64,000 nt of DNA from IMGVR_UViG_3300028416_000004:124001-188000; one strand, 5' to 3'. Counted from the first letter of the stretch, positions 15,028 to 46,213 are shown. Notes: generated from the sequence alone by a model not told the origin. Numbers and translations: made by a program.

Positions 15028-16503
15028 TTAATATTTTTTAAACTCAAATTTAGCTTTTCCACAATCCCATATTCTATCATAACCTAATTCTTGCATCATT
15101 TGCCATTCTGTTTTATTTTTATCATATATTTCTGGGAATTTTTTTGATATTTTATTTTTTCCAAATAAAAATTTATGAAATCTATTATATTTTGAAACTT
15201 TAGAATTATAATATGTGTAATCTGGATTTATTACTTTTTTCAATTTGAAATCATTTTTAGCATAAACATTATTTTCTTTATCAAAATTCCATCTTAAGTC
15301 TAAAAAAGTAAAAAGATTATTAAATTCATAATTATTTGAAATAAAATAAATAAATTTAGAAAATATTCCAACTACATTATAATTAATATCTGAAGCAAAT
15401 CTTTTTATTTCATAATTTTCATCTTTTATTTTTGAAACCATATTTCTTTTGTTAGATAAAGTAATAACAGAAACTAATTTACCTTCATATAAAGCTCCTA
15501 GTTTTATTTCACTTTTATCATTGCCTTGTATATGATTTTTTTCTAAAAAAATCCCTTTTTCTTTTGATGTTATCTCTTTTATAATACATTTTCTAGCAAA
15601 AATCGATGGCTTATTTTTAGTTTTTAAGATATTTTTTATTTTCTCTTTTACAATATTATTTTTCAAAAACCATTCATCTTCAAAAATATGAATTAATTTA
15701 TAGCCTTTTTTAAAACATATTTCAGATTTACTTAAATGAAAATTTCTATTTTTTTTGCCATAATTTTCTGAATGATAAAGATTTCCATTGAATTCTATAC
15801 AAATTTTTTTGTCTGGTATTATTATATCTATTTCCATACCATTAAAAATTTTTCTATTGTTTTTTAATATTTTTAAATTTAAGTCATTTTCTAAAAAATA
15901 TTTTAATTCTAATTCTGGTTTTGAAACAAAAGTTTTTTCTATTTTTTGAGAAGCTTTTTTTAAAATTTCACCTGCTTTATCTTTAAAAGAACTACTTGCA
16001 TATTGTTCTTTTGGAAATCTTAATTTATATGTTTCAAGGTTTAAATTGTGTTTTTTTAAATGTGTATTTGTTAAATATCTTACTTTTTTATTACATATTT
16101 TACAAGTAACAAAATTACCTTCTTTTATAGTTTCTAAATTTTTTTCTTTATTTTTTATAAAAGTTTTAAATTTTATAGATTCTTCTGGGAAATCTTTTAA
16201 ATATTCTTCGATGTTTTTGTTGTGCACTTTCTTTAAATGTAAAGTATATTGTCCACTTGAATTTTCTATATCTAATGTGTTCCAATTACAATATTTACAT
16301 TTGAATTTATTTTTTTCTTCCTTTTCTATTAAATCAAAATATTTAAAATGCCAATATTCTCCTTTTTCTTTTAAATATTTCCTTCTTTTATAAGAAGATT
16401 CAACTTTGATAGATAGAGTTTTTAAATGATTAGTAATACAACCACTTTTATTTTCTATATCATTAAATTCTTTTTGTGTTATTTTGCAAATTAAAACTTT
16501 CAT
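15028..16503 (-). mobile_element. Free-standing Hef-like homing endonuclease gene (zinc fingers + PD-(D/E)XK/Vsr-like nuclease + C-terminal domain)
   Basis: CKYC..HLKKVH and CKIC..HLKKH fingers; EIDIIIPDKKICIEFNGNLYH nuclease motif; IHIFEDEW; FARKC...NHIQG...RIWDCG tail. Very Lys/AT-rich and inserted after the capsid terminator. Confidence 0.7.
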
Positions 16504-22770: not shown

Positions 22771-24003
22771 TTAATTTACAGCTACTTCACTTTTTTCTTT
22801 GTGTAATTTCAAATAGCTTTCAACTCTACTTTTCGTTACATTTTTCAAGTCATATTTTTCTTTTACGAAATTATGTAGATTTTCTGAAATTCTTTTTACT
22901 TCTTCTGGGTTGTTAATAAGTTTTTTGATATTTTTATACCAATCTTTATGATTTCTATTATCTTTAACTAAGAAACCATTTTCACCATCTTCAATTAATT
23001 CTTTGTAAACCCCAAAATCTTGAGCAATTAAAACTTTTTTTGTCATTCCAGCCTCAATTATTTTAAGTTCAGATTTGACTTCATTAAATTTATTATGAAC
23101 TAAAGGAGCTAAACAAACATCACAAAAACTATAATGTTTACCATATTGAGTTAATGGCAAAGTCCATCTTCTAACATAATTCAATTTAGAATAATCTTCT
23201 GGATATTTTTCATTTTTAAATTCACTTAAAAACTTTCTATAATCTTCATCAACTATTTTGTAATCACTTGTAAAAATTTTTTCAAAACGATTCCAAACAC
23301 TTTCTTCTGGTTTTATTTTTCTTGTCTTTTTTTGACCAGTTTGTTGATTAATTTCTGTAATGTGACCTCTAGTATCAAAACCACATAAAATAATTTGATA
23401 TTTATCTTTTAAAGAATCGTCTGAATTTAATTTTGCCATAGAAGTTTCCATTAACTTCAAATCTTCTAAATGAGATGAACCACCAATCCAAGAAACTCTA
23501 AGTTTATCAAATTTTTCGGCTGTCTCATCTTGTTTCCACATTTTATGTTCTGAATCAATAGCATTAGGCATAACAATCACATTTTTGTTATATTTAGCTA
23601 TTTCTTTAGCAAAAATATCTGTTGTAGTTGTTACATAATCAGATTTTTTGATAGTTTTAATAATTTTTTCCTCTATATTTTCACTTTTTGCAGCATGATA
23701 CATAGGATGTGTAGTTGGAGGAGACCAATAATCATCAATATCCATAATCATAGTTACACCAGCAGATTTTAAGGTATCAAAAATTTCATCAATTCTTTCT
23801 ATTGGTCCAAAGTGTCTATGAAAGTGTATGATATCATATTTTTTTAAAGATTCTAAATCATTAAAATTAGGACTTAAATCAATTTTAACTTCAAAAGAGT
23901 CTTTATATTTTCTTTGAATTTCTTGTGCAGGCCAAATAGACCTAAAGTGCCCAACTCCAGCCAAATCTGAAGGTTGAAATAATATTTTTATTTTATCAGA
24001 CAT
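22771..24003 (-). CDS. Glycosyltransferase (GT-B, GT4-like)
   Basis: GVGHFRSIWP, DIDDYW, WIGGSSHLEDL, DVCLAPL..NKFNEVKSELKIIEAG, DGENGFLV. Confidence 0.85.
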   Translation of the reverse strand: MSDKIKILFQPSDLAGVGHFRSIWPAQEIQRKYKDSFEVKIDLSPNFNDLESLKKYDIIHFHRHFGPIERIDEIFDTLKSAGVTMIMDIDDYWSPPTTHPMYHAAKSENIEEKIIKTIKKSDYVTTTTDIFAKEIAKYNKNVIVMPNAIDSEHKMWKQDETAEKFDKLRVSWIGGSSHLEDLKLMETSMAKLNSDDSLKDKYQIILCGFDTRGHITEINQQTGQKKTRKIKPEESVWNRFEKIFTSDYKIVDEDYRKFLSEFKNEKYPEDYSKLNYVRRWTLPLTQYGKHYSFCDVCLAPLVHNKFNEVKSELKIIEAGMTKKVLIAQDFGVYKELIEDGENGFLVKDNRNHKDWYKNIKKLINNPEEVKRISENLHNFVKEKYDLKNVTKSRVESYLKLHKEKSEVAVN

Positions 24004-26862: not shown

Positions 26863-26895
26863 AAAAAACCCTCAAGTTATCTTGAGGGTTTTTTT
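26863..26895. terminator. Bidirectional intrinsic terminator
   Basis: AAAAAACCCTCAAG-TTAT-CTTGAGGGTTTTTTT. Confidence 0.85.
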
Positions 26896-27899: not shown

Positions 27900-28031
27900 T
27901 TTAAATTATATTTAATAATTTTATAATTTTTAAAAATAAATAGCTGAAAAAAAAGTTTTTTACACTTTTCATTTATTTTTAATAAAAAAAATGTATATTG
28001 CTTAATATAAGAAATAATACAATTCATAAAT

Positions 28032-28901
28032 ATGAAAAATAAAATTAAAGTCATAGTCCCATTTTATAATCCAGGAAAGTTTCTAGATAGGTGTATAAAT
28101 TCTTTGCTAACTCAAGATTATGATAACTATGAAATTCTTTTTATAGATGATTGTTCTACAGATGATTCTTTTTCTAAAATACCTGCTGTAAAATATAAAG
28201 GTGATAGTGAAGGAAATCTTTTGATGGATGATAATGGAGAACCTATAGTTGAAAGTAAACATCACTTATTAGACAAAACTAATTGTAGCAATATTTTAGC
28301 TTGGAGGTCTGGGGAAAGAATTACTGCTCTTCCTAATTTGCATAACGGAATAATGAGGTTTGCTACAGACTCAGAAGATATTGTTGTAATTGTAAATGGA
28401 GATGATTGGCTTGTTAATAAGAGAGTTTTATCTCAAATTAATGATTTTTATAACAAAAATGAAGAGTGTTGGTTAATGTATGGGAATTCAAAAAGTTCTA
28501 ACAATAGTCAAACATATAATCATAAAGAGTATACAAAAGAAGAATTTGAGGATTTAAGAAAAATACCTTTTATAATACCTCACATAAGAACTTTTAAAGC
28601 TGGTCTTTATAGTAAAATTGCAGAACAAGATGAAAATTTTGAATGTATGAAAGATAAATCAGGCAATTGGTATAAAGTTAAATATGATGTTTGTATGTTT
28701 TTACCCATGTTTGAAATGGCTGGTAAGGAGCATGTGTTCTTTAATAAAGAAGAAATGTATATACACAATGTAGATAATCCAATATCCGATAATAGACTAC
28801 AAAGAGAATTGCAGTTAACTACCTATATTGATGTTAATAGAAAGAAAAGTTTCGAAAAATTAGAAAGTTATAAAACAGAAAAATTAGAAGAAAATGATTA
28901 A
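28032..28901 (+). CDS. Glycosyltransferase family 2
   Basis: VIVPFYN, LLTQDYDNYEILFIDDCSTD, VNGDDWL. Confidence 0.88.
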   Translation: MKNKIKVIVPFYNPGKFLDRCINSLLTQDYDNYEILFIDDCSTDDSFSKIPAVKYKGDSEGNLLMDDNGEPIVESKHHLLDKTNCSNILAWRSGERITALPNLHNGIMRFATDSEDIVVIVNGDDWLVNKRVLSQINDFYNKNEECWLMYGNSKSSNNSQTYNHKEYTKEEFEDLRKIPFIIPHIRTFKAGLYSKIAEQDENFECMKDKSGNWYKVKYDVCMFLPMFEMAGKEHVFFNKEEMYIHNVDNPISDNRLQRELQLTTYIDVNRKKSFEKLESYKTEKLEEND

Positions 28902-29676
28902 TGGTATAATAATTTCACAAAACAATCCAGTACAATTAAACCTTTTATTATCATCTATTGATGTAAATTCAAATGATATTTTTGATTTGAGTGTTGTATA
29001 TACTTCTACAAACTATAGTTATAATTTAGGTTATGAAAAGTTAATCAAGAAATATCCTAAAATTAATTGGGTAGAAGGGGTAGAAGATTTTAAAGAAAAA
29101 ATTTTAGACTTATTAGAAAAGTCAAAAAGTGATTATACTTGTTTCTTTACAGATGACAATATTCTTTTTAGTAAAGTTAAGGAAGAAGATTTGGTTACTC
29201 AATTGAGAGATGATAAAGATACATTTTGTTTCTCTATGAGGTTAGGTAAAAATACTATAAAGTGTCATACGATGGATGCTGATAATATTATAAGACCTAA
29301 CTATGAAGATGATAAGTACATTATGTGGGATTGGCAAGTTCATTATTTGGATTTTGGTTATCCTTTATCTTTAAATGGACATATCTTTAGAACAAAAGAA
29401 ATAAAGAAGTTGACAAAAAAAGTTTCTTTTAGTTCTTTGGAAGATTATGAGAGCGGATTACAAATATTTGATAATTTCCCCAGAAAAAATATGTCTTCTT
29501 TCAAAGAGAGTGTTTTAGTTAGTGGTTTAGCAAAAGAAACTGAAAGTATTGAAAAATTAAACACTTCTTTTATATTGGATGACTTAGAAGTTGACTATAA
29601 AAATATGGATTTTAATCAAATTGAAGGATGTTATCAAGAGTTAGATTTTCCTTTAAACAAATTTGAATTAATTTAA
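28894..29676 (+). CDS. GT-A-fold glycosyltransferase-like protein
   Basis: IIISQNNPVQLNLLLSSI, FFTDDNI (DxD-like), FGYPLSLNGHIFR. Confidence 0.6.
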   Translation: MINGIIISQNNPVQLNLLLSSIDVNSNDIFDLSVVYTSTNYSYNLGYEKLIKKYPKINWVEGVEDFKEKILDLLEKSKSDYTCFFTDDNILFSKVKEEDLVTQLRDDKDTFCFSMRLGKNTIKCHTMDADNIIRPNYEDDKYIMWDWQVHYLDFGYPLSLNGHIFRTKEIKKLTKKVSFSSLEDYESGLQIFDNFPRKNMSSFKESVLVSGLAKETESIEKLNTSFILDDLEVDYKNMDFNQIEGCYQELDFPLNKFELI

Positions 29677-29680
29677 TGAT

Positions 29681-29974
29681 ATGAAACCAATAATAGTTCA
29701 CTATATAAATATAGGAAATTTAGATAATGTAGAAGTTTCAGAATATATTAATAATATAAAACAAACTTTTACATATAATGAAGAATATCATAGTATTTTT
29801 ATTCCTATTAGAAACAAAGAAACATATATTGACTGTTTAAATCCTATTGTATTACCAGAAGAAGAAAGAGAAAAATATATTAAAAAAATAGAAAATCTTA
29901 AAAAAAATGTAGAGGAAATGTTGAAAGAATTTCCTTTTTTAAACAAAAATGAACTTTTAATCGAAAAGAAATGA
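29681..29974 (+). CDS. Hypothetical protein
   Basis: 97-aa ORF coupled within the GT operon. Confidence 0.6.
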   Translation: MKPIIVHYINIGNLDNVEVSEYINNIKQTFTYNEEYHSIFIPIRNKETYIDCLNPIVLPEEEREKYIKKIENLKKNVEEMLKEFPFLNKNELLIEKK

Positions 29975-30684
29975 AAAAATTTTCAGAAAGAAATATTCAA
30001 GAAGGTTGGAGTGTAATAGTACCAGCTTATCAGGCACAAAAATATATTGAAAGTTGTTTAGATTCAATTCAAAATCAAACATTATTTCAAAAAAAAGATA
30101 ATTATGAAATTTTATTAGGTATAGATGGTTGTTTAGATACATTAAATGAAGTAAAGAAAATAAAAAATAAATACAAAAACTTAAAAGTTATAAATTTCAA
30201 AGAGAATAAAGGTACTTTTGTAACTTTAAACTCTTTACTTAATAATGTAAATTTTGACAAAACTATAACTGTTGGTGCTGATGATATTCAAATAAATAAT
30301 TTGTTAGAAACTGTAGAGCCTCACTTAAAAGAAAATGACTTAGTTTTGTATCATTGTCAAAATTTTACTGAAGATGGTAAGAATAGTTTAAGTCCAAAAG
30401 AAATGGAAGGTATAGCTGCTGTCAAATGGAGCGTATGGAAAGAAATAGGTGGTTATAAAGCTTGGAAAGTGGGTGCTGATAGTGATTTTGAAATGAGAAC
30501 TAAAAAATTTAAGAGATATATAATCAGAAAACCTCTTTATTTAAGAAGAATTCATTCTGAATCCTTAACTCAAAAAAGAGAAACTGGTTATGGTAGTGAA
30601 TATAGAAAAAGTATCACTAAAAAATTAGCTAAAGATTTTGAATATATTGAACCAGAAATGAATGAAAATTTTGAAATAATATGA
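29971..30684 (+). CDS. Glycosyltransferase family 2
   Basis: SVIVPAY, CLDSIQNQ, GIDG, GADD, IGGY...GADSDF, RRIH..SLT. Confidence 0.88.
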   Translation: MKKFSERNIQEGWSVIVPAYQAQKYIESCLDSIQNQTLFQKKDNYEILLGIDGCLDTLNEVKKIKNKYKNLKVINFKENKGTFVTLNSLLNNVNFDKTITVGADDIQINNLLETVEPHLKENDLVLYHCQNFTEDGKNSLSPKEMEGIAAVKWSVWKEIGGYKAWKVGADSDFEMRTKKFKRYIIRKPLYLRRIHSESLTQKRETGYGSEYRKSITKKLAKDFEYIEPEMNENFEII

Positions 30685-31349
30685 AATTAAAAGTAGTAGG
30701 AATTGCAAGTTTGCCTGAAAGAGAAGAATGCCTTAGAGATACTGTAAATTCTCTATATAATCAAGTAGATAAAATTATAGTAGGATTAAACAATTATAAA
30801 GAAGTGCCTAGTTTCTTAAAAAAAGAAAAAATAGAAAGTTATTTATTGGATAACTCCTTAGGAGATGCTGCTAAATTTTACAAAGTAGATGAATATAAAG
30901 GTCATTTTTATTTTGCGTGTGATGATGATTTGATATATAAAAAAAATTATATTGAGCATTTATTAAAAAACAACAACCCAGTAATTGGTATTCATGCTTC
31001 AATAATAAAATATCCTTGTAAAAATTATTATAAAGACAGAATAGTTTTGCATTCAAATTCTGCATTAGACAAAGATACTGAAGTAGATGTTATAGGTACT
31101 GGTTGTTGTAGAATAGATTTAGAAGTTTTAGATTTAAAATTAAAAGATTTTAAAACACCAAATAAAGCAGATATATATTTATCGGATATTTGCAAAAAAC
31201 AAAATGTAAAAATGATAAGTATTGCAAGAAAAGCTAAAGAGTTTTTTATATACAATCCAAAAATGAAAAATAAATATACAATATATGATGATTTACACTC
31301 TAAAGAAACACCTATACATTGTGAAATAATTAAAAAATGGGAAAAATAA
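30681..31349 (+). CDS. GT-A-fold glycosyltransferase
   Basis: IASLPER...TVNSLYNQVD, GDAAKF, CDDDLIY, GTG. Confidence 0.75.
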   Translation: MKLKVVGIASLPEREECLRDTVNSLYNQVDKIIVGLNNYKEVPSFLKKEKIESYLLDNSLGDAAKFYKVDEYKGHFYFACDDDLIYKKNYIEHLLKNNNPVIGIHASIIKYPCKNYYKDRIVLHSNSALDKDTEVDVIGTGCCRIDLEVLDLKLKDFKTPNKADIYLSDICKKQNVKMISIARKAKEFFIYNPKMKNKYTIYDDLHSKETPIHCEIIKKWEK

Positions 31350-31350
31350 A

Positions 31351-31941
31351 ATGATAAATTTAGAAAAAACAAAAACTTTTGTTATAAACTTAGATAGAAG
31401 AGTAGATAGAATATCTGAAATAAAATTACCTTTAAAATGGGAAAGGTTTTCAGCAACTGATGGCAAAGAAAGTTTCTCAAATAAACCAATGTTTGAAAGA
31501 GGTTGGAGAGGATGTAGAGATTCGCATATAAGATTGTTGGAAAAAGTAAAAGAGTTAGATGAAGATTTTTTTATAATTTTTGAAGATGATGTTGAAGTTG
31601 GTGAAAATTTTATTAATGATTTAGAAAAAATAACTAAAACTTTACCAGAAAATTGGGATTTATTATTTTTAGGTGGTTGGAATGTTGGAGATAAAATTAA
31701 ATATAATGATTTTTTATATTTAGCTAAAAAAGTATATTGTACACACGCTTTTATTATTAGAAAAGAGATTGTTGAAAAAATGTTAAACAAATTTAAAGAA
31801 AGAGAATTTAAAGTTGATGTGTTATTATCTGAATTATTACCTAACATTAATTCTTTTATATGCAATCCAACAATAGCATGGCAAAAGCCAGGATTTTCAG
31901 ATATAGAAAATATTATAACTAATAATAAACATTTAAGATAA
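31351..31941 (+). CDS. Glycosyltransferase family 25
   Basis: FVINLDRRVDR, RFSATDG, GC..SH, IFEDD, WDLLFLG, THAF. Confidence 0.88.
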   Translation: MINLEKTKTFVINLDRRVDRISEIKLPLKWERFSATDGKESFSNKPMFERGWRGCRDSHIRLLEKVKELDEDFFIIFEDDVEVGENFINDLEKITKTLPENWDLLFLGGWNVGDKIKYNDFLYLAKKVYCTHAFIIRKEIVEKMLNKFKEREFKVDVLLSELLPNINSFICNPTIAWQKPGFSDIENIITNNKHLR

Positions 31942-31943
31942 TT

Positions 31944-32543
31944 ATGCCAATATCACATAAAAATAAATTAATTTTTATACATATCCCAAAGAATGCTGGG
32001 ACATCAATAACTGACTCAGAAGGGATGAATTTTTCTTTTAAAGGTCATCATTTGCCTTCTTTTTATAAAAGTAACTTTCCAAATCAATGGGAAAATTATA
32101 TAAAGTTTTGTGTTATTAGAAATCCTTGGGATAGAGTAGTGTCTAATTATGAATACGCTAGAATGCCTGAAAGTCATTGGCATTCAGTTAGTGGTAATTC
32201 TATATATGGAGCTCACCCAGATTATAAAAATTTAATAAAACTTAACTTTAAAGAAACTTTACAAGCTTTTAAAGAAGATAATAACTTTTTAAAACATCAA
32301 GGTTGGGAATCTCAAAATAAGTATATTTATAATAATGAAGGTTTGATGTTATTGGATTACGTTTTTAAATTAGAAGATATTGAGTTAGATTTAAAATTTA
32401 AAAAAATAATTCCTAACTTAAGTGTTAAAAATGTAAGTAAAAAAAGTTATAAAAAATATAAAGATTATTATGATAATGAAACTAAAGATATTGTTTCTGA
32501 GATATATGCTAAAGATATAGAATTATTTAAATTTAAATTTTAA
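31944..32543 (+). CDS. Carbohydrate sulfotransferase (Sulfotransfer_2 family)
   Basis: 5'-PSB motif FIHIPKNAGTSI; 3'-PB motif RNPWDRVVSNY; Y..D.ELF.F C-terminus. Confidence 0.9.
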   Translation: MPISHKNKLIFIHIPKNAGTSITDSEGMNFSFKGHHLPSFYKSNFPNQWENYIKFCVIRNPWDRVVSNYEYARMPESHWHSVSGNSIYGAHPDYKNLIKLNFKETLQAFKEDNNFLKHQGWESQNKYIYNNEGLMLLDYVFKLEDIELDLKFKKIIPNLSVKNVSKKSYKKYKDYYDNETKDIVSEIYAKDIELFKFKF

Positions 32544-33391
32544 TGAAAAAAATATTTTTTATAAACAATTGGAATGAAGACAATCGAAAACTTTTAGAAA
32601 GATATTCCAAACAAACTCCAAATAGTGATGGTGTTTGGAAAGATTTGGTTGGAACAATAAATATGAATGAAGCTGATTATTTTATTGTCTTAGAAGTTTT
32701 TGCAACAAATACTCCAATTGAAAAAACAATTTTTATAAAAAGAGAACCAAATTATATAAGACCTTATAGAAATTTAAAATATAAACATATAGTAGATTAT
32801 AATTTAAAAAATACTGGTGTCACTTATTGGTTGAATAAATCTTATAAACAATTAACAGAATTAAAATATCCAAATAAAAGTAAAAAGATTAGTTGTGTTG
32901 CCTCTTCAAAACATACTCACAGAAATGAATATATTAAAAATTTATTTAAAACAAAAAATAATATTGAATTATATGGAAAGGGTCACAATGAAAAATATTA
33001 TGGCGATAATTATAAGGGCATTTTAAATTATGATGGAAATTGTAAATTTGAAGGTTTAATTGATTATGAATATACTATTGTTATGGAAAATTCACAACAA
33101 AAAAATTATTGGACTGAAAAGTTAGCTGATGCTTATTTGTCTTGGTGTATGCCAATTTATTGGGGGTGTCCAAATATAGAAAATTACTTTCCAAAAGATA
33201 GTTATAGATTAATTGATATTAATAGTAGTAATCCTTTAGATGATATAAATGAAATTATTAAAAAACCTTTAACAAAAACTGAAAAAAATTCACTAAAAGA
33301 AGCAAGGATGTTAATACTCAATGAATATAATATATGGGAAGTAATATATAAAAAAATAAAAGAAATTGAAAATAAAAAAATAATAATTTAA
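32543..33391 (+). CDS. Glycosyltransferase family 10 (fucosyltransferase-like)
   Basis: YEYTIVMENSQQKNYWTEKLADAY...PIYWGCPNI, the GT10 signature. Confidence 0.85.
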   Translation: MKKIFFINNWNEDNRKLLERYSKQTPNSDGVWKDLVGTINMNEADYFIVLEVFATNTPIEKTIFIKREPNYIRPYRNLKYKHIVDYNLKNTGVTYWLNKSYKQLTELKYPNKSKKISCVASSKHTHRNEYIKNLFKTKNNIELYGKGHNEKYYGDNYKGILNYDGNCKFEGLIDYEYTIVMENSQQKNYWTEKLADAYLSWCMPIYWGCPNIENYFPKDSYRLIDINSSNPLDDINEIIKKPLTKTEKNSLKEARMLILNEYNIWEVIYKKIKEIENKKIII

Positions 33392-33405
33392 ATAATAATA
33401 ATAAT

Positions 33406-34029
33406 ATGAAGTTTTATAGTCAATATGGTCAAGATAAATGGTTATATGAAAAATATTTTAAAAATAAAAAAAATGGTGTATTCTTAGAGATAGGTGCAGA
33501 TGATGGAATAGATAAAAGTAATACAAAATTTTTTGAAGATATTGGATGGTATGGGATGTGTATAGAACCCAGCCCTAAACGCTTTAAATTACTTGAGAAT
33601 AATAGAACATGTATATGTGAAAATTACGCACTATCTAATAAGGTTGATGAAGTTGATTTTATGGATATATCAGGGTGGGGCAAAGGTTTAAGTGGAATAG
33701 TTGACTCTTATGATGAAAAACATAAAAAAAGAATTGAGCAAGAAATAAAAAATCCTAAAAATAAAGGAATTGAAATTATAAAAGTTAAAACAGAATTGTT
33801 AAATAATTTATTAAATAAGCATAATATTAATGAGATTGATTTTTGCACTATAGATACTGAAGGTGGTGAAATTGATATAATAAAAAGTATAGATTTCGAC
33901 AAAGTGAAAATAAAATTAATTATTGTTGAAAATAATTATAACAATACTTTAATTCAAAAAATATTATCAAATAATGGATATCAGTTGATAAAAAAAATAA
34001 ATGTTGATGATATATATGAAAAAAAATAA
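33406..34029 (+). CDS. FkbM-family SAM methyltransferase
   Basis: YSQYGQD, FLEIGADDG..SNT, GW.G.CIEP, IDTEGGE. Confidence 0.9.
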   Translation: MKFYSQYGQDKWLYEKYFKNKKNGVFLEIGADDGIDKSNTKFFEDIGWYGMCIEPSPKRFKLLENNRTCICENYALSNKVDEVDFMDISGWGKGLSGIVDSYDEKHKKRIEQEIKNPKNKGIEIIKVKTELLNNLLNKHNINEIDFCTIDTEGGEIDIIKSIDFDKVKIKLIIVENNYNNTLIQKILSNNGYQLIKKINVDDIYEKK

Positions 34030-34038
34030 TATAAAACA

Positions 34039-34614
34039 ATGAATAAAAATATAATTTCTCAAAATTTTTTAATAACTCAAAAAGAAAGAATAGAAATATT
34101 AAAACAAAAACCTCAAGTTATTTGGTTAACTGGATTATCTGGTTCTGGTAAATCAACTATAGCAAATGAGTTAGCATCTAAATTGCATAATGAAGGTAAA
34201 TTAGCTTATATTTTAGATGGTGACAATGTTAGAATGGGTCTTAATAAAGATTTGAGTTTTTCTGATGATGATAGAAAGGAAAATATTAGAAGAATAGCTG
34301 AAGTTGCAAATTTAATGATTGATTTAGGTGCTATAGTTATCACAGCTTTCATTTCGCCATTTGAAAATGAAAGACAAATGGCTAAAGAGATAATAGGCAA
34401 AGATAATTTTGTTGAAATTTATATTAAAACACCATTAGAAACTTGTGAAGAGCGTGACCCAAAAGGGTTGTATAAAAAGGCTAGAGCTGGAGAAATACCT
34501 ATGTTTACAGGTATAGATTCACCTTATGAAGAACCTAAAAACCCTAATATGTTTATTAGAACAGACAAGATGAGTATAGAAGATAGTGTAGAATTTATTT
34601 ATAAAAATTTATGA
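34039..34614 (+). CDS. cysC: Adenylyl-sulfate (APS) kinase
   Basis: WLTGLSGSGKSTIA, LDGDNVR, DRKENIRR, FISPF, RDPKGLYKKARAGEI, FTGIDSPYEEP. Confidence 0.95.
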   Translation: MNKNIISQNFLITQKERIEILKQKPQVIWLTGLSGSGKSTIANELASKLHNEGKLAYILDGDNVRMGLNKDLSFSDDDRKENIRRIAEVANLMIDLGAIVITAFISPFENERQMAKEIIGKDNFVEIYIKTPLETCEERDPKGLYKKARAGEIPMFTGIDSPYEEPKNPNMFIRTDKMSIEDSVEFIYKNL

Positions 34615-35078
34615 GTTGGGAAAAGAAAAATCATGGAGGTGAACCCACCAAAAACAAAGATAAGAAATATGCGATATTCGTTGGTAGATATCAACCATAC
34701 CATTATGGGCATATCAATTTAATTCAACAAAAGTTGGATGAGGGTGTTCCAGTACTTATTATGGTTAGAGATATTGAACCAGATGAAAAGAATCCTTTTA
34801 CAACAGAACAAACTGTAAGTATGATTGAAAAGTATCATAATTCTAAAGGTGATGATGTAAAGGTAATGATTATACCTGATATTGAATCGGTTAATTATGG
34901 TAGAGGTGTAGGATACGAGATTAATGAATACAGACCAACAGAAGAGATTGGGTTTATTTCAGCCACTAAGATTAGGGAATCAATTAAAGAAGGTAATAAC
35001 TCTTGGAGAGAGATGGTTGATGAATCAATCCAGGGAGATGTTGAAAATTATTTATATGAAACTAGAAATAAGTCATAA
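34611..35078 (+). CDS. HxGH nucleotidyltransferase (cytidylyltransferase-like)
   Basis: GRYQPYHYGH, KNPF, ISATKIRE; 4-nt overlap with cysC. Confidence 0.8.
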   Translation: MSWEKKNHGGEPTKNKDKKYAIFVGRYQPYHYGHINLIQQKLDEGVPVLIMVRDIEPDEKNPFTTEQTVSMIEKYHNSKGDDVKVMIIPDIESVNYGRGVGYEINEYRPTEEIGFISATKIRESIKEGNNSWREMVDESIQGDVENYLYETRNKS

Positions 35079-35274
35079 AAGACATATTGCCAAAACTATA
35101 ACTTGGAGATTATTAGGAACAATAGATACTATAATAATTAGTTGGTTTTTGACAAATAATTGGATGATTGGTTTTTCAATTGGAGGTGTTGAAGTTATAA
35201 GTAAAATGATTCTTTATTATATTCATGAGAGATTATGGTATAAATCTAACTTTGGAATTAAAAGAAATAAATAA
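35056..35274 (+). CDS. DUF2061 small membrane protein
   Basis: In-frame ATG at 35056: SHKRHIAKTITWRLLGTIDT...K..LYYIHERLW. Confidence 0.85.
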   Translation: MKLEISHKRHIAKTITWRLLGTIDTIIISWFLTNNWMIGFSIGGVEVISKMILYYIHERLWYKSNFGIKRNK

Positions 35275-35338: not shown

Positions 35339-36952
35339 ATGAATTTTAAAGATATGACAAAAAGCGACATAAAACGCTTCACTAAAATTTATAAAGACAA
35401 AGAGTTAAGTTGGGACAAAAGAATGGAAAAGCTTATGAAACTAACTGGTAAAAGTGAAAGAACAGTTAGAAAGTGGGCTTCAGAAAAGTTGAACTTAAGC
35501 GAAAAAAAAGAAAGTATCCCAGAAGAGTATGTTAAAGCTCAAAAAAGAATTTTCAATAAAAAGAAAAAGAAATTTATTGTAACTTGGGCACAAAATAATA
35601 CTCCAGTAAATGAAAGGTTTTTCAAAAATTTAATTAAATATTCTAAACACATAGACGCAGATATACACGTTATTGCTGGACGTTATAAAAATCCAACATC
35701 TGTATGGTCTGATGAACAAGAAGAAGATGAAAGATGGGATGAAATGGTTCAACCATATCTTGATGCCAATAGACACGATATACATAAGTATGTTTCAATT
35801 ATGTCTGACATTAAGATTCATCCTACTGCAGTTAATCCAATGACTGGTATGCAATCTATTTCTGGTGTTAACTCTTGTATATTTGGCTCTCCTAAATTAC
35901 AAATGGAAATGATACCAGTAATAGAAGGTGAAAAGTCAAAAATGATGGTTACCACTGGAGCTTGTACTGAAAAAAATTATACTGATTCTAAAGCTGGAAA
36001 GAAAGGTGAGTTTCATCACGTAATAGGTTTTGTAGTAGTTGAAATTGAAGATGATGAAACATTTTATATAAGACAAGTTTCCGCTGAAGATAATGGTGAT
36101 TTTTTAGATTTGTACAAAGAGGTTACTTATGATGTTAAGAATTCAAAAACAATCATTAAAGATATTAAAGATATAGAAGCTTGTATTTTAGGTGATTTAC
36201 ACTGGGGACATCATGAACAAGAAGTGTTAGATGTTACTCATAAGATGTTAAATAAAATCAAACCTAAACATGTAGTTTTGCATGATGTTTTTGATGGATA
36301 TTCAATTTCACATCATGATATGAAAGACCCATTTATTCAATACTCAAAAGAGATAAATGATAAGAATAATCTTAAAAAAGAAGTTGATGAACTTTTAGAA
36401 GGTTTAGAAACTTTTGAAAAGTATGAAAATGTAGTTATTGTAAGAAGTAATCACGATGACTTTTTAGATAGATGGGTTAAAAATGAAGATTGGAAACGTC
36501 AACCAACCCCCAAAAATTCCCCTTTATATATGGAATACTCTTCTATTTTGTTGAAACAATATGCAGAACACCCTGAAAATGTAAAAGGTATTATACCTTC
36601 CATTATAAATAATAAATTTCCAAATTTCAAAACTTTAGGAAGAAGAGATTCATATAAAGTTTTAGATTGGGAATTAGGTCAACATGGAGATGTTGGTTCG
36701 AATGGTTCAAGAGGTAGTTTATTACAATATAGAAAATTAAATACAAAAATTGTTGTGGGTCATTACCATAGTCCACAAAGAAAGGATGGTGCTCTTGCAG
36801 TTGGTACTTCAACAAAATTAAGAGTAGGTTATAATAATGGTCCAAGTTCTTGGTTACAATCTCATGTTATAATTCATAAAAACGGAAAAGCACAACATAT
36901 TAATTTTTTTAAGAATAAAAAAGGAGATATAAATTATACAACATTTAAATAA
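35339..36952 (+). CDS. T5 A1-like metallophosphoesterase/nuclease with N-terminal HTH
   Basis: FIVTWAQNNTP, TTGACT.KNY..SKAGKK, GDLH, LHDVFD, SNHD, HGD.G.NGSRG, GHYHS, GYN.GPSSW: the motif series recalled for phage T5 A1 and calcineurin-like phosphoesterases. Confidence 0.8.
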   Translation: MNFKDMTKSDIKRFTKIYKDKELSWDKRMEKLMKLTGKSERTVRKWASEKLNLSEKKESIPEEYVKAQKRIFNKKKKKFIVTWAQNNTPVNERFFKNLIKYSKHIDADIHVIAGRYKNPTSVWSDEQEEDERWDEMVQPYLDANRHDIHKYVSIMSDIKIHPTAVNPMTGMQSISGVNSCIFGSPKLQMEMIPVIEGEKSKMMVTTGACTEKNYTDSKAGKKGEFHHVIGFVVVEIEDDETFYIRQVSAEDNGDFLDLYKEVTYDVKNSKTIIKDIKDIEACILGDLHWGHHEQEVLDVTHKMLNKIKPKHVVLHDVFDGYSISHHDMKDPFIQYSKEINDKNNLKKEVDELLEGLETFEKYENVVIVRSNHDDFLDRWVKNEDWKRQPTPKNSPLYMEYSSILLKQYAEHPENVKGIIPSIINNKFPNFKTLGRRDSYKVLDWELGQHGDVGSNGSRGSLLQYRKLNTKIVVGHYHSPQRKDGALAVGTSTKLRVGYNNGPSSWLQSHVIIHKNGKAQHINFFKNKKGDINYTTFK

Positions 36953-38110: not shown

Positions 38111-38167
38111 TTTATTAGCATTTATATAAAAAAAAATATATATTTGTTTAAATAAAAAAAATATAAT

Positions 38168-39348: not shown

Positions 39349-39368
39349 GTATTTAAATTGAATTTAAG

Positions 39369-39399
39369 AAAAGTCTCAATTATTTGAGGCTTTTTTTTT
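39369..39399 (+). terminator. Intrinsic terminator
   Basis: AAAAGTCTCAA-TTAT-TTGAGGC followed by T9. Confidence 0.75.
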
Positions 39400-39465: not shown

Positions 39466-40674
39466 ATGGAAACAGTTTCTCAACAAATTTCAGAAGAAGA
39501 AATGTTAAAACAAAGAGAAAAAGCAATTTCAAGTCTTATTTCTAAAATAGAAAAAGAAGAAAATACAGTATATATATACTGTCCTGCTATGAACACTCCT
39601 AGTGGAGGTATCTCTGTTTTATTCGAACACGCAAAAATATTAAAAGATGCTGGAAAAAGTGTGGCAATCATTTATGAACCACAACAAAATAATAAAGCAT
39701 CATTAGAAGCTACTCAAAAAGCTAGATTAAAAGGTGCTAAAGACCCAGTAATTATTTTTGATAAATTTAACCCAACTTGGTTAGGTGATTTAAAAGAAGA
39801 AATTGATGTTAGATGTTTAGCTGAAGGAGTTCTTACTTATACTGATGGAACGACTGAAACAGTAGAATCATTAAAAATGAATCCAGAAGACATCTTAATT
39901 ATACCTGAAGGATTTCCTAATATTATGGAAAACACTTCTCAATTACCTTGTAGAAGAGTTGTTATGGCTCAAAGTTGGTATTATGTTTTATCTGGTATGA
40001 AGGTTGGTCAAAAATGGCAACACTTTGGAATTAAAGATGTAATTTCTGTTTCAGATGGTATTACAGAATATTTAAATACTATTATGCCAGGTTTAAATAT
40101 TAAAAATTATAAACAAGGTATTGATAGAAAATTGTTTAATGTCCCAGAAAAAATTTCTGATAAAGCTCCAATGATTTCCTATATGCCTGGTAGAGGGCCA
40201 GAGTCTCAAATGAAAACTAATACTGTTATTAGAACATTTTATGAATTTTATCCACATTATAGATGGATTCGTTTCGCTCCTCTTCAAGGTTTAACTAAAG
40301 AACAATTTGCACAACAGTTAAAAAATTCTGCTATCGCATTATATACTGATGAAGTTGCTGGATTTGGTACATTACCTTTAGAAGCTATGGCTAGCGGTAC
40401 TCACGTTGTTGGTTGGACTCCTTTTGGAAGTAAAGAATATGTGAATGAAAAAAATGGATTTTGGGCTGTTAACGGAGATGTTTTCCAATTGGCTGAATTG
40501 ATTGGTATGGCTTTGGATAGATATTTTTCTGGAGTTTTAGATTCAGAAGAAATTCAAAAAGAATACGAAAGAACAATTTCAGAGTATACAAGAGAAAAAG
40601 AAGTAGAATCTGTATTAAATATTTATAACACTATTAAAAATGAAAGAATTGAAGAATTTAGAAACCTTAAATAA
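39466..40674 (+). CDS. Glycosyltransferase (GT-B, GT4-like)
   Basis: PSGG...LFEHA..L, DILIIPE, GID..LF, GFGTLPLEAMASG..VVG. Confidence 0.85.
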   Translation: METVSQQISEEEMLKQREKAISSLISKIEKEENTVYIYCPAMNTPSGGISVLFEHAKILKDAGKSVAIIYEPQQNNKASLEATQKARLKGAKDPVIIFDKFNPTWLGDLKEEIDVRCLAEGVLTYTDGTTETVESLKMNPEDILIIPEGFPNIMENTSQLPCRRVVMAQSWYYVLSGMKVGQKWQHFGIKDVISVSDGITEYLNTIMPGLNIKNYKQGIDRKLFNVPEKISDKAPMISYMPGRGPESQMKTNTVIRTFYEFYPHYRWIRFAPLQGLTKEQFAQQLKNSAIALYTDEVAGFGTLPLEAMASGTHVVGWTPFGSKEYVNEKNGFWAVNGDVFQLAELIGMALDRYFSGVLDSEEIQKEYERTISEYTREKEVESVLNIYNTIKNERIEEFRNLK

Positions 40675-41590
40675 TAAAAATTTATTAGTTGTATTACCAA
40701 TTAATAAAATTGAAGAAGAAACTTTAAGTGAATCTTTATATAATTTAGCAGAACAAACAAATCCTACGGATGTTTTGATTTTAGTTTCTGAAAATTTAGA
40801 AAAAGATACTTTAGAAAAAATTTCTGAAATAGCTAACAAACCTTATAAAAGAGCTTTTGAAACAGATGATAAAGGAAATCCTTTAACAAAAACTTTAACT
40901 TCAGAAAAAACATTGAACTTTGCTATTCAGACAACTACATCAACTAGTTTTAACTCTGTTTTTAACGATGCTTTTAATATTGCTAACGAAAATGGATATA
41001 AGTGGTTTTCTGTAATTGATAAAGATGATGTTGTTGAAGAAAGTTGGGTCTATAATTTTGATAGATTCTCTACTGAAAAAGAAGACGTATCTGTATTTTT
41101 CCCAATTGTAAGACAAGTTTCAGCTGGAAATATGACTGGACATTTAAATGAAGCTACTTGGCTTGAAGGTAAAGTTGAAGTTTCTGGGCAAGCTGACTTA
41201 CAATTATTAATGTCTTGGAATTGCTTATCACCAACAGGTTGTATGTTGAAAGTTGAAGATATTAAAGAATACAGTGAAGAAAGAGAAGGTAAATATTATC
41301 CTTTTAAGGAAAATATGAGTATCGCTTCTTCATATGAATTTTTCTTAAGAATGATTTATGAAGATTTAAAAACTTATACTATTCCAAGATATGGTTATCA
41401 AATGAGAATGGATGTTAATAGCTCAACTTTTGATAGATTCTCTTCAAAAATCCCTTCAAATATAACTACAATATCTAAGGAAAATGGAGGTTTGACTGCT
41501 AAAGAGATTGGCTTTTGGATGGAACAAGCTAAAAGTGAATACTTTATGTCTGAAGATAGAGAAATAGAATACGAAGAAACAACCGCCTAA
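40640..41590 (+). CDS. GT-A-fold glycosyltransferase-like protein
   Basis: VVLPI, SL..Q, WFSVIDKDD, YEFFLR...TIPRYGY. Confidence 0.6.
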   Translation: MKELKNLETLNNKNLLVVLPINKIEEETLSESLYNLAEQTNPTDVLILVSENLEKDTLEKISEIANKPYKRAFETDDKGNPLTKTLTSEKTLNFAIQTTTSTSFNSVFNDAFNIANENGYKWFSVIDKDDVVEESWVYNFDRFSTEKEDVSVFFPIVRQVSAGNMTGHLNEATWLEGKVEVSGQADLQLLMSWNCLSPTGCMLKVEDIKEYSEEREGKYYPFKENMSIASSYEFFLRMIYEDLKTYTIPRYGYQMRMDVNSSTFDRFSSKIPSNITTISKENGGLTAKEIGFWMEQAKSEYFMSEDREIEYEETTA

Positions 41591-42643: not shown

Positions 42644-43003
42644 ATGGAAAATCAAGGTGATACAAATAATTTAGAAGATATGTTTCGAAAATTATTAGAT
42701 AAATCTCTTAAAAATATGGAAGAAGAAAGAGATTTATCTTTAGAGAGATATAGAAGACAAGATGAAACTATAGTTAGTCCAGAAGATTTTGTTTTGCAAG
42801 GTAAATTTGCAGTTGATTATTTAAAAGTTGCTGCTGAACGTTCTAATTCGATGCTTTCTGTAGCAAAAATGATAAAGGATATAATTTATAAAGATGGTTC
42901 AAATCCAGATTCTTCATTATCTTCTAACGGAATGCCTAATGATGATATGAAAAAAGAAATTTTTAAATATATAAACGGTAATAAAAATAAAAGTGCTGAA
43001 TAA
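42644..43003 (+). CDS. Hypothetical helical protein
   Basis: 119 aa; late-type motif upstream. Size and helicity fit a small terminase, but no diagnostic motif. Confidence 0.5.
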   Translation: MENQGDTNNLEDMFRKLLDKSLKNMEEERDLSLERYRRQDETIVSPEDFVLQGKFAVDYLKVAAERSNSMLSVAKMIKDIIYKDGSNPDSSLSSNGMPNDDMKKEIFKYINGNKNKSAE

Positions 43004-43011
43004 ATTAAATT

Positions 43012-45603: not shown

Positions 45604-45629
45604 TTTATTTAAATTTAATATTTATAAAT

Positions 45630-46046
45630 ATGGGTTGTATAAAAGTTGATGATAAATTACAAAAATCTGAAGAGCTTTCTAAGTTTTTACTTTTTTTGTT
45701 TAAAGAGAATAGAGTAAAAATACCTAAGTTTAGTTTGTTTCAAATATTACTATCTAAATTTAGACCAGGCTTAGATAGTGATTCTATAAGTTCTGAAATT
45801 ATATCAAAATTTGAAAAAATAGGAATTCCAACTGGACCTTTAGAGAATGGAACTCCAAATGTAATGGAAGAATATACTAAGCTTGTAACTAATGAAATAG
45901 TTGATGCTATTCAAAATGATATGAGAGTTGATATTGCGGTAGATTCAGGTATGAATGTTATATCTAGTGGAGCGAATGGAGGGGGTCCTCTTGTTGCAAC
46001 TGGTGCTAATGTTGCACCTCATAGTGGAAGTGGATTAGCTACATAA
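45630..46046 (+). CDS. Putative baseplate/tail protein
   Basis: RPGL, GIPTGP..NGTPN, Gly-rich C-terminus (GANGGGP); precedes the gp5-like gene. Confidence 0.5.
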   Translation: MGCIKVDDKLQKSEELSKFLLFLFKENRVKIPKFSLFQILLSKFRPGLDSDSISSEIISKFEKIGIPTGPLENGTPNVMEEYTKLVTNEIVDAIQNDMRVDIAVDSGMNVISSGANGGGPLVATGANVAPHSGSGLAT

Positions 46047-46051
46047 ATATT

Positions 46052-46213
46052 ATGGAAGAGGTAACAAAAAGAAGTAAAACTCAAATTTTAAGAGAAATTC
46101 AAGAAACTGTAGATGAATTTTTACAAAAAAAACAATTAGTTGAAAGTTTACTTGAAGAAATTGATAATTTAGAGTTAAAATATTATGAACTTCAAAAAGA
46201 AATAAAAAAATAA
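46052..46213 (+). CDS. Small coiled-coil protein (53 aa)
   Basis: Not in the ORF track: MEEVTKRSKTQILREIQETVDEFLQKKQLVESLLEEIDNLELKYYELQKEIKK exactly fills the gap. Confidence 0.65.
   Translation: MEEVTKRSKTQILREIQETVDEFLQKKQLVESLLEEIDNLELKYYELQKEIKK

What the first reader, a model, noticed from the sequence alone, without database searches (positions are those of the whole stretch)
28032..34029. Tightly coupled glycan-building operon (GT-A/GT2 x4, GT25, sulfotransferase, GT10, FkbM)
Nine abutting or overlapping genes encode sugar transfer, sulfation and O-methylation. No flippase, polymerase or sugar-nucleotide synthesis gene is in the operon, and no obvious TM anchors are present, which implies a cytoplasmic acceptor such as assembling virions (or DNA). 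Established: GT25 members are often beta-galactosyltransferases and GT10 members alpha-1,3/4-fucosyltransferases. Inference: a sulfated, methylated, fucose-containing glycan. It could shield the virion or mimic the sulfated polysaccharides that Bacteroidota bind.
Basis: partly seen in the sequence, partly recalled or inferred. Interest (0 to 1): 0.7.

Follow-up and report, generated by a model that had tools for sequence, protein, structure and literature searches.

The report
Phage operon for a sulfated glycan
A roughly 241-kb marine phage that probably infects Bacteroidota carries a transcribed 12-gene operon encoding six sugar transferases, a sulfotransferase, a methyltransferase and its own supply of activated sulfate, so it can probably build a sulfated, methylated glycan, but what that glycan is attached to is still unknown.

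Summary
The nine genes are real, tightly coupled, and mostly assigned correctly. Pfam finds GT2 twice, plus GT25, Sulfotransfer_2, GT10 and FkbM, all above cut-off. The two unassigned ORFs have GT-A folds in Atlas models.

It runs on through an APS kinase, an NMNAT-fold adenylyltransferase and a DUF2061 membrane protein, to 35274. RNA contigs from four seawater metatranscriptomes start at about 28025 and cover it.

The three-gene PAPS cassette recurs in 77 of 79 related phage loci. It is sometimes fused, and in 36 of 79 loci a sulfotransferase lies in the locus.

The operon is one version of a hypervariable glycan island in a family of large T4-like phages. Other versions carry GDP-mannose dehydratase and further methyl- and sulfotransferases.

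The roughly 241-kb genome has no initiating transferase, flippase or polymerase, and no TET or C5-methylase.

The acceptor is unresolved. I favour virion proteins (0.4) over host envelope glycans (0.3) and DNA (0.05). The absence of TM helices does not discriminate between them.

Side finding: the adenylyltransferase may be an undescribed type of ATP sulfurylase. Of 13 cellular genomes that carry it, 12 lack Sat and none has CysD.

The parts
28025..28031 (+). Approximate 5' end of the operon transcript (7-nt leader)
   Evidence: RNA contigs start at 28025, 28032 and 28064 in three runs. Contigs of the divergent gene end at 27913-27916, and none of the listed RNA contigs covers 27917-28024. Contig ends are imprecise.
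28032..28901 (+). g1, GT2-family glycosyltransferase (289 aa)
   Evidence: Pfam PF00535 at 58.3 bits (cut-off 23.3), N-terminal part only. DDCSTDD and NGDDW motifs are present.
28894..29676 (+). g2, GT-A-fold glycosyltransferase-like protein (260 aa)
   Evidence: No Pfam, NCBIfam or PHROG hit. The Atlas model (pTM 0.90) matches viral 'glycosyltransferase' clusters at TM 0.9 and GT2 clusters at TM about 0.6. A TDD motif is present.
29681..29974 (+). g3, 97-aa protein resembling a segment of the phage's own T4-type portal
   Evidence: BLASTP against the phage's portal, residues 250-351: 29% identity, E 2.6e-6. Weak Portal_T4 hits in Pfam, PHROGs and Atlas. Function unknown, and not found in related islands.
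29971..30684 (+). g4, GT2-family glycosyltransferase (237 aa)
   Evidence: PF00535 at 52.3 bits and PF13641 at 32.6 bits. GADD motif.
30681..31349 (+). g5, GT-A-fold glycosyltransferase-like protein (222 aa)
   Evidence: No Pfam hit. The Atlas model (pTM 0.91) matches viral GT2-annotated clusters at TM 0.9. The same domain is fused to FkbM methyltransferases in bacteria. DDD motif.
31351..31941 (+). g6, GT25-family glycosyltransferase (196 aa)
   Evidence: PF01755 at 53.2 bits. phrog_2835 'glucosyltransferase' at 1.9e-15. The nearest solved relative is mimivirus R655 (9CRZ, 2.5e-5).
31944..32543 (+). g7, compact carbohydrate-type sulfotransferase (199 aa)
   Evidence: PF03567 at 38.4 bits and phrog_3347. 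Invariant P15-K16-N17-x-G19-T20 and R59-x-P61-x-x-R64-x-x-S67 across 33 homologues. 312 homologues found, 364 viral stretches.
32543..33391 (+). g8, GT10-family (alpha-1,3/4-fucosyltransferase-like) glycosyltransferase (282 aa)
   Evidence: PF00852 at 48.9 bits. H. pylori FucT 5ZOI at 2.1e-9 and 2NZW at 8.7e-9, with an aligned ENS...Y.TEK...IYWG block.
33406..34029 (+). g9, FkbM-family SAM methyltransferase (207 aa)
   Evidence: PF05050 at 73.3 bits and TIGR01444 at 48 bits.
34039..34614 (+). g10, APS kinase (CysC, makes PAPS), 191 aa
   Evidence: PF01583 at 231.5 bits, E 5.3e-69. P-loop GLSGSGKST.
34611..35078 (+). g11, NMNAT/PPAT-fold HxGH adenylyltransferase (155 aa); candidate non-canonical ATP sulfurylase
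   Evidence: PF01467 at 34 bits. NadM NMNAT matches the N-terminal half only. AF2 model matches archaeal NMNAT at TM 0.72 and 20% identity. APSK lies immediately upstream in 77 of 79 viral loci, and fusions occur. Its distribution in cellular genomes is complementary to Sat/CysD.
35056..35274 (+). g12, DUF2061 small membrane protein (72 aa), last gene of the unit
   Evidence: PF09834 at 76.5 bits. Adjacent to the cassette in 60 of 79 viral loci. A DUF2061 gene also sits in a Mesorhizobium nodH/nodPQ locus.
22771..24003 (-). GT4 glycosyltransferase (410 aa), a conserved backbone gene flanking the island in relatives; possibly part of the same pathway
   Evidence: PF00534 at 39.9 bits and phrog_7162 at 1.9e-43. 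Present in 16 related loci.
39466..41590 (+). GT4 (39466-40674) and a weak GT2-like gene (40640-41590), conserved backbone genes downstream of the island
   Evidence: PF00534 at 32.5 bits. PF00535 at 20.3 bits, below cut-off. Both are syntenic with PhoH, g16 and a sigma-like gene in relatives.

Best explanation
The finding is the first nine genes of a 12-gene operon (about 28025-35274). The operon belongs to a ~241-kb T4-like jumbo phage from seawater that very probably infects Bacteroidota.

Shown: it encodes six soluble glycosyltransferases (four GT-A/GT2-like, one GT25, one GT10), a PAPS-dependent sulfotransferase, an FkbM methyltransferase, and a three-gene cassette (APS kinase, an adenylyltransferase, DUF2061) that supplies the sulfate donor PAPS. 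It is transcribed in the sea. It is one version of a hypervariable glycan island that sits in a conserved backbone in a family of large phages.

Inferred: during infection these enzymes use host sugar nucleotides and phage-made PAPS, in the cytoplasm. They assemble a short, branched glycan that is sulfated, O-methylated and carries a fucose-type sugar.

Most likely, but not shown: the acceptor is one or more of the phage's own structural proteins. That would resemble mycobacteriophage virion glycosylation and chlorovirus and mimivirus capsid or fibril glycans. The island's variability would then reflect selection on the particle surface.
For: Enzyme content and motifs.

Operon structure: overlaps; RNA contigs from four metatranscriptomes with an uncovered promoter gap at 27917-28024 and new starts at 35329 and 38165; terminators at 26863-26894 and 39366-39397.

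PAPS supply tied to sulfotransfer: APSK-NT(-DUF2061) in 77 of 79 viral loci, with a sulfotransferase in the locus (usually abutting the cassette) in 36 of 79. The order ST-APSK-NT-DUF2061 is seen in L031-L034.

Island nature: relatives carry GT25-ST-GT10 together with GDP-mannose 4,6-dehydratase/SDRs (33 of 80 loci), Methyltransf_24 (26), Methyltransf_11 (19) and DegT (15). These lie between conserved GT4, dUTPase, PhoH, g16, GT4 and sigma-like genes.

For a non-lipid, phage-side acceptor: no Bac_transf, WecA-type, Wzx or Wzy/ligase gene in the ~241 kb. The island lies between the head module (protease, MCP) and the baseplate. Its divergent neighbour carries the ACTATTTAT-type motif shared with structural genes. 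Precedent: phage virion glycosylation by GT operons, as summarised in PMC12619734. The nearest solved GT25 relative is from mimivirus.

Host: Bacteroidota-type TTG/TAnnTTTG promoters are enriched 14-fold. The closest MCP among isolates is from Flavobacterium phages. The closest cellular APSK-NT genes are in marine Bacteroidetes single-cell genomes.
Against: Nothing ties the glycan to a virion protein directly. I found no acceptor motif, no collagen-like or repeat acceptor, no C-terminal extension of the MCP and no proteomic data.

The g1 promoter matches neither the putative late motif nor the host-type motif. RNA depth is lower than for the neighbouring putative late genes, so timing is unknown.

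GT2, GT4, GT25 and GT10 are typical LPS/capsule families, and their bacterial members act on lipid-linked acceptors. The operon ends with a small membrane protein. The genome is not closed (CheckV estimates 88% for the 232-kb contig), so missing genes are not proven absent.
Confidence: 0.4

Rival explanations
1. Host-envelope remodelling. The soluble transferases act at the cytoplasmic face on the host's own undecaprenyl-linked intermediates (O-antigen, capsule, or the Bacteroidota O-glycosylation glycan). Host flippases and ligases export the altered, sulfated and methylated glycan. This changes the infected cell's surface, for example to block superinfection or alter grazing or adhesion.
For: The family types are those of LPS and capsule loci. 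NCBIfam's nearest names are WcaA, TuaG, EpsE and PgaC, all far below cut-off. PHROGs labels are GtrB-like. GT10's nearest solved relative acts on H. pylori LPS. Lack of TM helices is normal for such enzymes (general knowledge). A membrane protein, DUF2061, closes the operon. Hypervariability would match host serotype diversity. General knowledge: cyanomyoviruses carry large 'LPS gene' clusters that have been interpreted this way.
Against: No initiating transferase, flippase, polymerase or ligase in ~241 kb. Export of a foreign repeat unit would therefore depend on host enzymes that are usually substrate-selective. Related islands bring whole GDP-sugar pathways, as capsid-glycosylating giant viruses do. 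The phage looks lytic and T4-like, so it has little time to benefit from serotype conversion.
Confidence: 0.3
2. DNA hypermodification. The transferases build a glycan on hydroxymethylated bases of the phage genome to evade restriction.
For: Phage GT-A and GT-B enzymes can place multi-sugar glycans on 5hmC (10.1101/2023.12.21.572611). The genome has a thymidylate-synthase homologue. In relatives, a dUTPase/dCTP-deaminase-like gene flanks the island.
Against: The TS homologue lies 136 kb away, is most similar to B. subtilis ThyA (5e-40) and keeps the dUMP-type Asn. No C5-methylase was found. No Tet/JBP hit was found, although that search had no positive control. The published DNA GTs sit next to TS or 5mYOX genes. 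Sulfated or O-methylated DNA glycans, and GT10 or GT25 enzymes acting on DNA, are unknown to me.
Confidence: 0.05
3. The APS kinase cassette is an ordinary auxiliary metabolic gene set that boosts host assimilatory sulfate reduction and is unrelated to the glycan genes. The rest of the operon modifies a soluble or unknown acceptor such as a metabolite or a host protein.
For: Phage cysC has been read as an assimilatory AMG (10.1101/2023.05.30.542503). 43 of 79 cassette loci show no sulfotransferase within the fetched flanks. In marine Bacteroidetes genomes the cassette lies beside metH, metK and ahcY.
Against: The phage has no PAPS/APS reductase or CysD. The cassette is translationally coupled to the glycan genes. 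A sulfotransferase abuts it in 36 of 79 phage loci and in a haloarchaeon.
Confidence: 0.1

Closest known systems
Mycobacteriophage virion glycosylation operons (Freeman et al. 2023, as cited in PMC12619734)
   Same: Clusters of soluble phage-encoded glycosyltransferases act in the cytoplasm, with no flippase or polymerase. The location is near structural genes.
   Different: Different phage lineage and host phylum. No sulfotransferase or PAPS genes are reported there. Attachment to capsid and tail-tube C-termini was shown experimentally there and is untested here.
Chlorovirus PBCV-1 and Mimivirus glycan machineries (general knowledge; R655 in PMC9546862)
   Same: The virus encodes its own soluble multi-GT machinery, methyltransferases and, in this phage's relatives, GDP-mannose dehydratase-type sugar-nucleotide genes. 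Gene sets are clade-specific and variable. g6's nearest solved relative is mimivirus R655.
   Different: Those are eukaryotic viruses. No sulfation is known to me. Sequence similarity is remote (2.5e-5).
'LPS gene' islands of T4-like cyanomyoviruses (general knowledge)
   Same: Hyperplastic islands of GT2, GT25 and methyltransferase genes in T4-like marine phages. The acceptor is unknown there too.
   Different: Here a sulfotransferase and a PAPS cassette are built into the operon. The host is probably Bacteroidota.
Bacterial O-antigen/capsule loci with GT10 fucosyltransferase (H. pylori FutA; 2NZW, 5ZOI)
   Same: The same GT families occur. The GT10 donor-binding motif is conserved.
   Different: No initiating phosphoglycosyl transferase, Wzx, Wzy or ligase.
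Rhizobial NodH with NodPQ, and bifunctional PAPS synthases
   Same: A sulfotransferase is co-encoded with dedicated sulfate activation. DUF2061 is present in a Mesorhizobium nod locus. APSK is fused to an adenylyltransferase, as in PAPS synthase.
   Different: The adenylyltransferase partner is a 150-aa NMNAT-fold protein. It is not Sat (PF01747) and not CysDN.

Membership tests
GT2 (Pfam PF00535), g1 and g4 | Profile match above the gathering score, and a DxD metal/nucleotide-sugar motif | tested here: met
   58.3 and 52.3 bits against a cut-off of 23.3. NGDDW and GADD motifs. g1 matches only the N-terminal 40 profile positions.
GT-A fold glycosyltransferase, g2 and g5 | Rossmann-like GT-A fold with a DxD motif | tested here: inconclusive
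   No sequence-profile hit. Atlas predicted models match GT2-annotated clusters at TM 0.6-0.9. TDD and DDD motifs are present. This rests on fold-level evidence from predicted models only.
GT25 (PF01755), g6 | Profile match above cut-off and a DxD motif | tested here: met
   53.2 bits against a cut-off of 24. EDDVE motif. Sugar and acceptor specificity are not testable here.
GT10 alpha-1,3/4-fucosyltransferase, g8 | C-terminal GDP-fucose binding domain with the ENS/T...Y.TEK motif | tested here: met
   PF00852 at 48.9 bits against a cut-off of 23.9. The aligned block MENSQQKNYWTEK matches H. pylori FENTQGYGYVTEK.
GT10 alpha-1,3/4-fucosyltransferase, g8 | Transfers fucose from GDP-fucose | not testable with these tools
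   No GDP-fucose genes in this phage. Related islands carry GDP-mannose 4,6-dehydratase plus SDRs, which fits a GDP-6-deoxyhexose donor.
PAPS-dependent sulfotransferase (PF03567), g7 | Profile match, plus the 5'-phosphosulfate loop (PKxxGT) and the 3'-phosphate motif (RxPxxRxxS) | tested here: met
   38.4 bits against a cut-off of 22. Both motifs are invariant in 33 homologues. No solved relative was found by profile search.
FkbM methyltransferase (PF05050), g9 | Profile match above cut-off | tested here: met
   73.3 bits against 22.7, and TIGR01444 at 48 bits against 37.7. O-methylation of a sugar is inferred from context only.
APS kinase (PF01583), g10 | Full-length profile match and a P-loop | tested here: met
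   231.5 bits over profile positions 2-151 of 152.
NMN adenylyltransferase (NadM type), g11 | Score above the family cut-off over the full length; role in NAD synthesis | tested here: not met
   NCBIfam NF002243 at 51 bits against a cut-off of 127, and TIGR01527 at 44.6 against 181. Only the N-terminal ~70 residues align. Identity to solved NMNATs is 20%. Dadabacteria that carry a 72%-identical copy also have a canonical NadD.
ATP sulfurylase, known types (Sat PF01747; CysD TIGR02039), g11 | Homology to Sat or CysD | tested here: not met
   No PF01747 or PF01507 match anywhere in the phage. g11 would be an analogue, not a member. Its activity is not testable here.
Wzx/Wzy- or ABC-type surface polysaccharide pathway | Initiating phosphoglycosyl transferase, flippase, polymerase/ligase | tested here: not met
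   PF02397, PF00953, PF01943 and PF04932 are absent from G000 and G001. The genome is not closed.
Phage DNA glycan hypermodification cluster | GT adjacent to a hydroxymethylase (TS homologue), or to a C5-methylase plus a 5mYOX | tested here: not met
   A ThyA-like gene lies 136 kb away. No C5-methylase. No Tet/JBP hit, but that search had no positive control.
Phage virion glycosylation system | Glycan covalently bound to capsid or tail proteins | not testable with these tools
   Only context is available: the position between head and baseplate modules, and the absence of lipid-carrier genes.

The most novel reading that the evidence does not exclude
The 155-aa NMNAT-fold protein g11 is the founding member of a third, undescribed type of ATP sulfurylase. 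With the APS kinase (often fused to it) and DUF2061 it would form a compact PAPS synthase found across bacteria, archaea and many phages. The viral 'cysC' genes now counted as sulfur-assimilation AMGs would then mainly feed viral sulfotransferases. This phage would carry a complete route from sulfate to a sulfated glycan, possibly displayed on its virion.
Probability: 0.4. Interest if true: 0.8.

Novelty: new variant of a known kind. Interest (0 to 1): 0.62.

Why it matters
Virus-encoded glycan machineries are known from mycobacteriophages, cyanophages and giant viruses. A phage operon that joins glycosyl transfer, O-methylation, sulfation and its own PAPS supply has not, as far as I could find, been described.

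If the glycan is on the virion, sulfated phage particles would be new. It could affect adsorption, stickiness to marine polysaccharide gels and recognition by Bacteroidota.

Whatever the acceptor, the linkage data change the reading of viral cysC, from 'assimilatory sulfate reduction AMG' to donor supply for sulfotransferases.

The data also point to a testable candidate for a missing enzyme. Many bacteria and archaea have an APS kinase but no known ATP sulfurylase, and they carry this small adenylyltransferase.

Tried and rejected
- **Sigma-70 promoter scan:** 126 sites against 123 expected, so uninformative in this AT-rich DNA.
- **Timing class of the g1 promoter:** neither the TAnnTTTG motif nor the ACTATTTAT motif fits upstream of 28025. 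Timing is left open.
- **Frameshift between 34611-35078 and 34924-35274:** rejected. The DUF2061 gene has its own ATG at 35056.
- **Collagen-like acceptor for the GT25:** no G-x-y repeats in either contig in any frame.
- **Sulfotransferase profile against PDB sequences:** no hit.
- **Complex prediction of g10 with g11:** no answer, score 0.00. This is not evidence either way.
- **Fold search of the g11 model:** only generic NMNAT/PPAT matches. It cannot decide substrate.
- **MCP search in three Bacteroidetes single-cell genomes that carry the cassette:** nothing found, so those copies look chromosomal (ftsA/ftsZ neighbours) rather than from an infecting phage.
- **Membership in the 'moraphage' lineage:** could not be checked from the paper's text.
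- **Literature on DUF2061 and on a small ATP sulfurylase:** nothing on function.
- **Freeman et al. 2023:** not held in the library, so it is cited second-hand.
- **blastn of the operon against isolated phages:** only two uncultured huge phages matched.

Full report
**Observation**

The window is part of a 138-kb IMG/VR viral contig. The same phage is found at 99.96% identity on a 232.5-kb contig (CheckV 88%), which the window's contig overhangs by 8.6 kb. Identical proteins are recorded on a 240,856-bp contig. GC content is 27%.

At 28032-34029 there are nine + strand ORFs exactly as described. Their junctions range from an 8-nt overlap to a 14-nt gap. Pfam assigns GT2 to g1 and g4, GT25 to g6, Sulfotransfer_2 to g7, GT10 to g8 and FkbM to g9, all above the gathering scores.

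g2 and g5 have no profile hit. Their Atlas models (pTM about 0.9) superpose on GT-A/GT2-annotated clusters, mostly viral, and both carry DxD-like motifs. g3 (97 aa) is not an enzyme of any known family.

No Kyte-Doolittle window in g1-g9 reaches TM-like hydrophobicity.

The operon does not end at 34029. Nine bases downstream begins an APS kinase (231 bits). Its stop overlaps the start of an HxGH adenylyltransferase (g11), and g11 overlaps a 72-aa DUF2061 protein that has its own ATG at 35056. The sulfuryl donor PAPS is therefore provided for within the operon.

Seawater metatranscriptomes hold the region. In four RNA runs:
- The divergent gene's contigs end at 27913-27916.
- Contigs for the operon begin at 28025-28064.
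- None of the listed RNA contigs covers the 108-nt promoter gap between them.
- Depth declines along g1-g12.
- New, deeper contigs begin at 35329/35330 (g13, a T5 A1-like phosphoesterase, phrog_1745) and at 38165 (g15).

Terminator-like hairpins bracket the region at 26863-26894 and 39366-39397. I therefore take the unit to be g1-g12, about 28025-35274.

**What it is part of**

The MCP, prohead protease, portal and baseplate wedge are T4-like. The closest isolates by MCP are Flavobacterium phages, at 34% identity.

Upstream regions are 14-fold enriched for TATATTTG. About 50 genes are preceded by TTG...TAnnTTTG, the Bacteroidota sigma-A promoter form. Structural genes instead share an ACTATTTAT motif. 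No Shine-Dalgarno sequences are visible. A Bacteroidota host is therefore well supported.

The sulfotransferase belongs to a compact, roughly 197-aa family with 312 homologues and 364 viral stretches. Its PAPS-binding motifs are invariant.

In 80 viral loci around these genes the commonest neighbours are:
- GDP-mannose 4,6-dehydratase and related SDRs (33 loci)
- PhoH (28)
- GT10 (27)
- Methyltransf_24 (26)
- Methyltransf_11 (19)
- DegT aminotransferase (15)
- GT2_5 (13)
- GT25 and FkbM (11 each)

These lie between conserved GT4, dUTPase-like, PolB-exo-like, PhoH, g16, GT4, GT2-like and sigma-like genes. Two uncultured huge phages (462 and 484 kb) carry related clusters. The operon is thus one allele of a hypervariable glycan island in a conserved backbone. 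This allele has no sugar-nucleotide genes but does carry the PAPS cassette.

**Chemistry**

GT10 keeps the donor-binding block of H. pylori alpha-1,3-fucosyltransferase. GT25's nearest solved relative is mimivirus R655, a putative collagen galactosyltransferase.

A sulfated, O-methylated glycan containing a fucose-type sugar is a reasonable inference. The actual sugars and linkages cannot be derived from sequence.

**Acceptor**

The ~241 kb contain no Bac_transf or WecA-type initiating enzyme, no Wzx and no Wzy/ligase. There is no C5-methylase, and no Tet/JBP hit, although that last search had no positive control. The only thymidylate-synthase homologue is ThyA-like, keeps the dUMP-type Asn and lies 136 kb away. 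DNA is therefore unlikely as the acceptor.

Absence of TM helices does not separate a virion acceptor from lipid-linked host intermediates, because ordinary O-antigen GTs are also soluble.

I favour virion proteins for these reasons:
- the precedent of mycobacteriophages and of giant viruses
- the self-sufficiency of related islands
- the position between the head and baseplate modules

The g1 promoter class is unknown. No acceptor feature was found: no collagen-like repeats and no MCP extension. I therefore give this explanation only 0.4, against 0.3 for host-envelope remodelling.

**The PAPS cassette**

Linkage in phages:
- g11 has more than 5000 homologues; the 120 best listed are at least 79% identical.
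- In 79 further viral loci, an APS kinase lies immediately upstream in 77. The other two are cut by contig ends.
- DUF2061 is adjacent in 60 of the 79.
- APSK-NT fusions occur (349 and 366 aa).
- A sulfotransferase lies in the locus in 36 of the 79. In 29 it is a Sulfotransfer_3/1-type gene, abutting the cassette in nearly all; in 7 it is the g7 type.

Cellular genomes:
- The same domain is fused or adjacent to APS kinase, in both orders, across many bacterial and archaeal phyla.
- In the cultured haloarchaeon Halocatena pleomorpha, a sulfotransferase sits two genes from the fusion.
- In marine Bacteroidetes single-cell genomes the pair (75% identical to the phage's) is chromosomal, near ftsAZ and beside metH or metK/ahcY.
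- A DUF2061 gene also lies in a Mesorhizobium nodH/nodPQ locus.

Neither the phage nor 12 of 13 tested cellular carriers have Sat, and none has CysD. Three complete Dadabacteria chromosomes have an APS kinase, a CysH-like reductase and a canonical NadD, but no known ATP sulfurylase.

g11 fails the NMNAT cut-offs and is only 20% identical to solved NMNATs.

Taken together, these results support two conclusions:
- Phage cysC, so far read as an assimilatory AMG, serves sulfotransfer.
- g11 is a candidate non-orthologous ATP sulfurylase.

MAG incompleteness and the lack of any assay keep this at about 0.4-0.5. I found no description of it in the library.

**Verdict**

The chemical interpretation is supported. 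The acceptor argument is not established. The system is a new variant (sulfating, with a built-in donor supply) of the known kind 'virus-encoded glycan islands'. Its most interesting by-product is the candidate enzyme.

Noticed in passing
window 34039-35274; loci L105-L263: The APS kinase, NMNAT-fold adenylyltransferase and DUF2061 form a cassette that recurs, sometimes fused, in many phages, bacteria and archaea. The cellular carriers I tested mostly lack Sat and CysD. The adenylyltransferase is a candidate new ATP sulfurylase.
   Followed up: yes
window 29681-29974: g3 (97 aa, GC 19.7%) is 29% identical (E 2.6e-6) to residues 250-351 of the phage's own T4-type portal protein (G001 102980-104809). 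So a fragment-like portal paralogue sits inside the glycosyltransferase operon. It is absent from related islands.
   Followed up: partly
window 35339-36952: g13 is a strong match to phrog_1745 ('DNA transfer protein', T5 A1-like metallophosphoesterase; 6.9e-155). RNA contigs give it its own start at about 35329, so it is not part of the glycan unit.
   Followed up: partly
G001 whole contig; e.g. window 38140-38147 and 27936-27944: There are two upstream motif classes. TTG-N19-TAnnTTTG (the Bacteroidota sigma-A type) occurs before about 50 genes, mostly in G001 1-100 kb. ACTATTTAT occurs before structural genes and is a putative late promoter.
   Followed up: partly
window 15028-16503 (- strand): A 491-aa HNH/homing-endonuclease-like gene (phrog_3339, 6.6e-77) lies directly beside the major capsid protein gene.
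   Followed up: no
loci such as L168:13141-14559: A DHH-family phosphoesterase (weak hit, 8.7e-5) lies near the PAPS cassette in 18 of 79 phage loci. DHH enzymes include pAp phosphatases, so it might remove the sulfotransferase by-product.
   Followed up: no
G000 42656-50800 (outside the window; G001 190360-198504): Several segments of 180-740 bp are repeated within a few kb at 80-94% identity, which suggests a family of tandem paralogous genes.
   Followed up: no
L188:5597-6450: One marine Bacteroidetes single-cell genome carries two tandem copies of the adenylyltransferase (132 and 150 aa) after the APS kinase.
   Followed up: no
window 26863-26894: A perfect 14-bp-stem bidirectional terminator-like hairpin separates the PhoH unit from the convergent - strand genes.
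   Followed up: no
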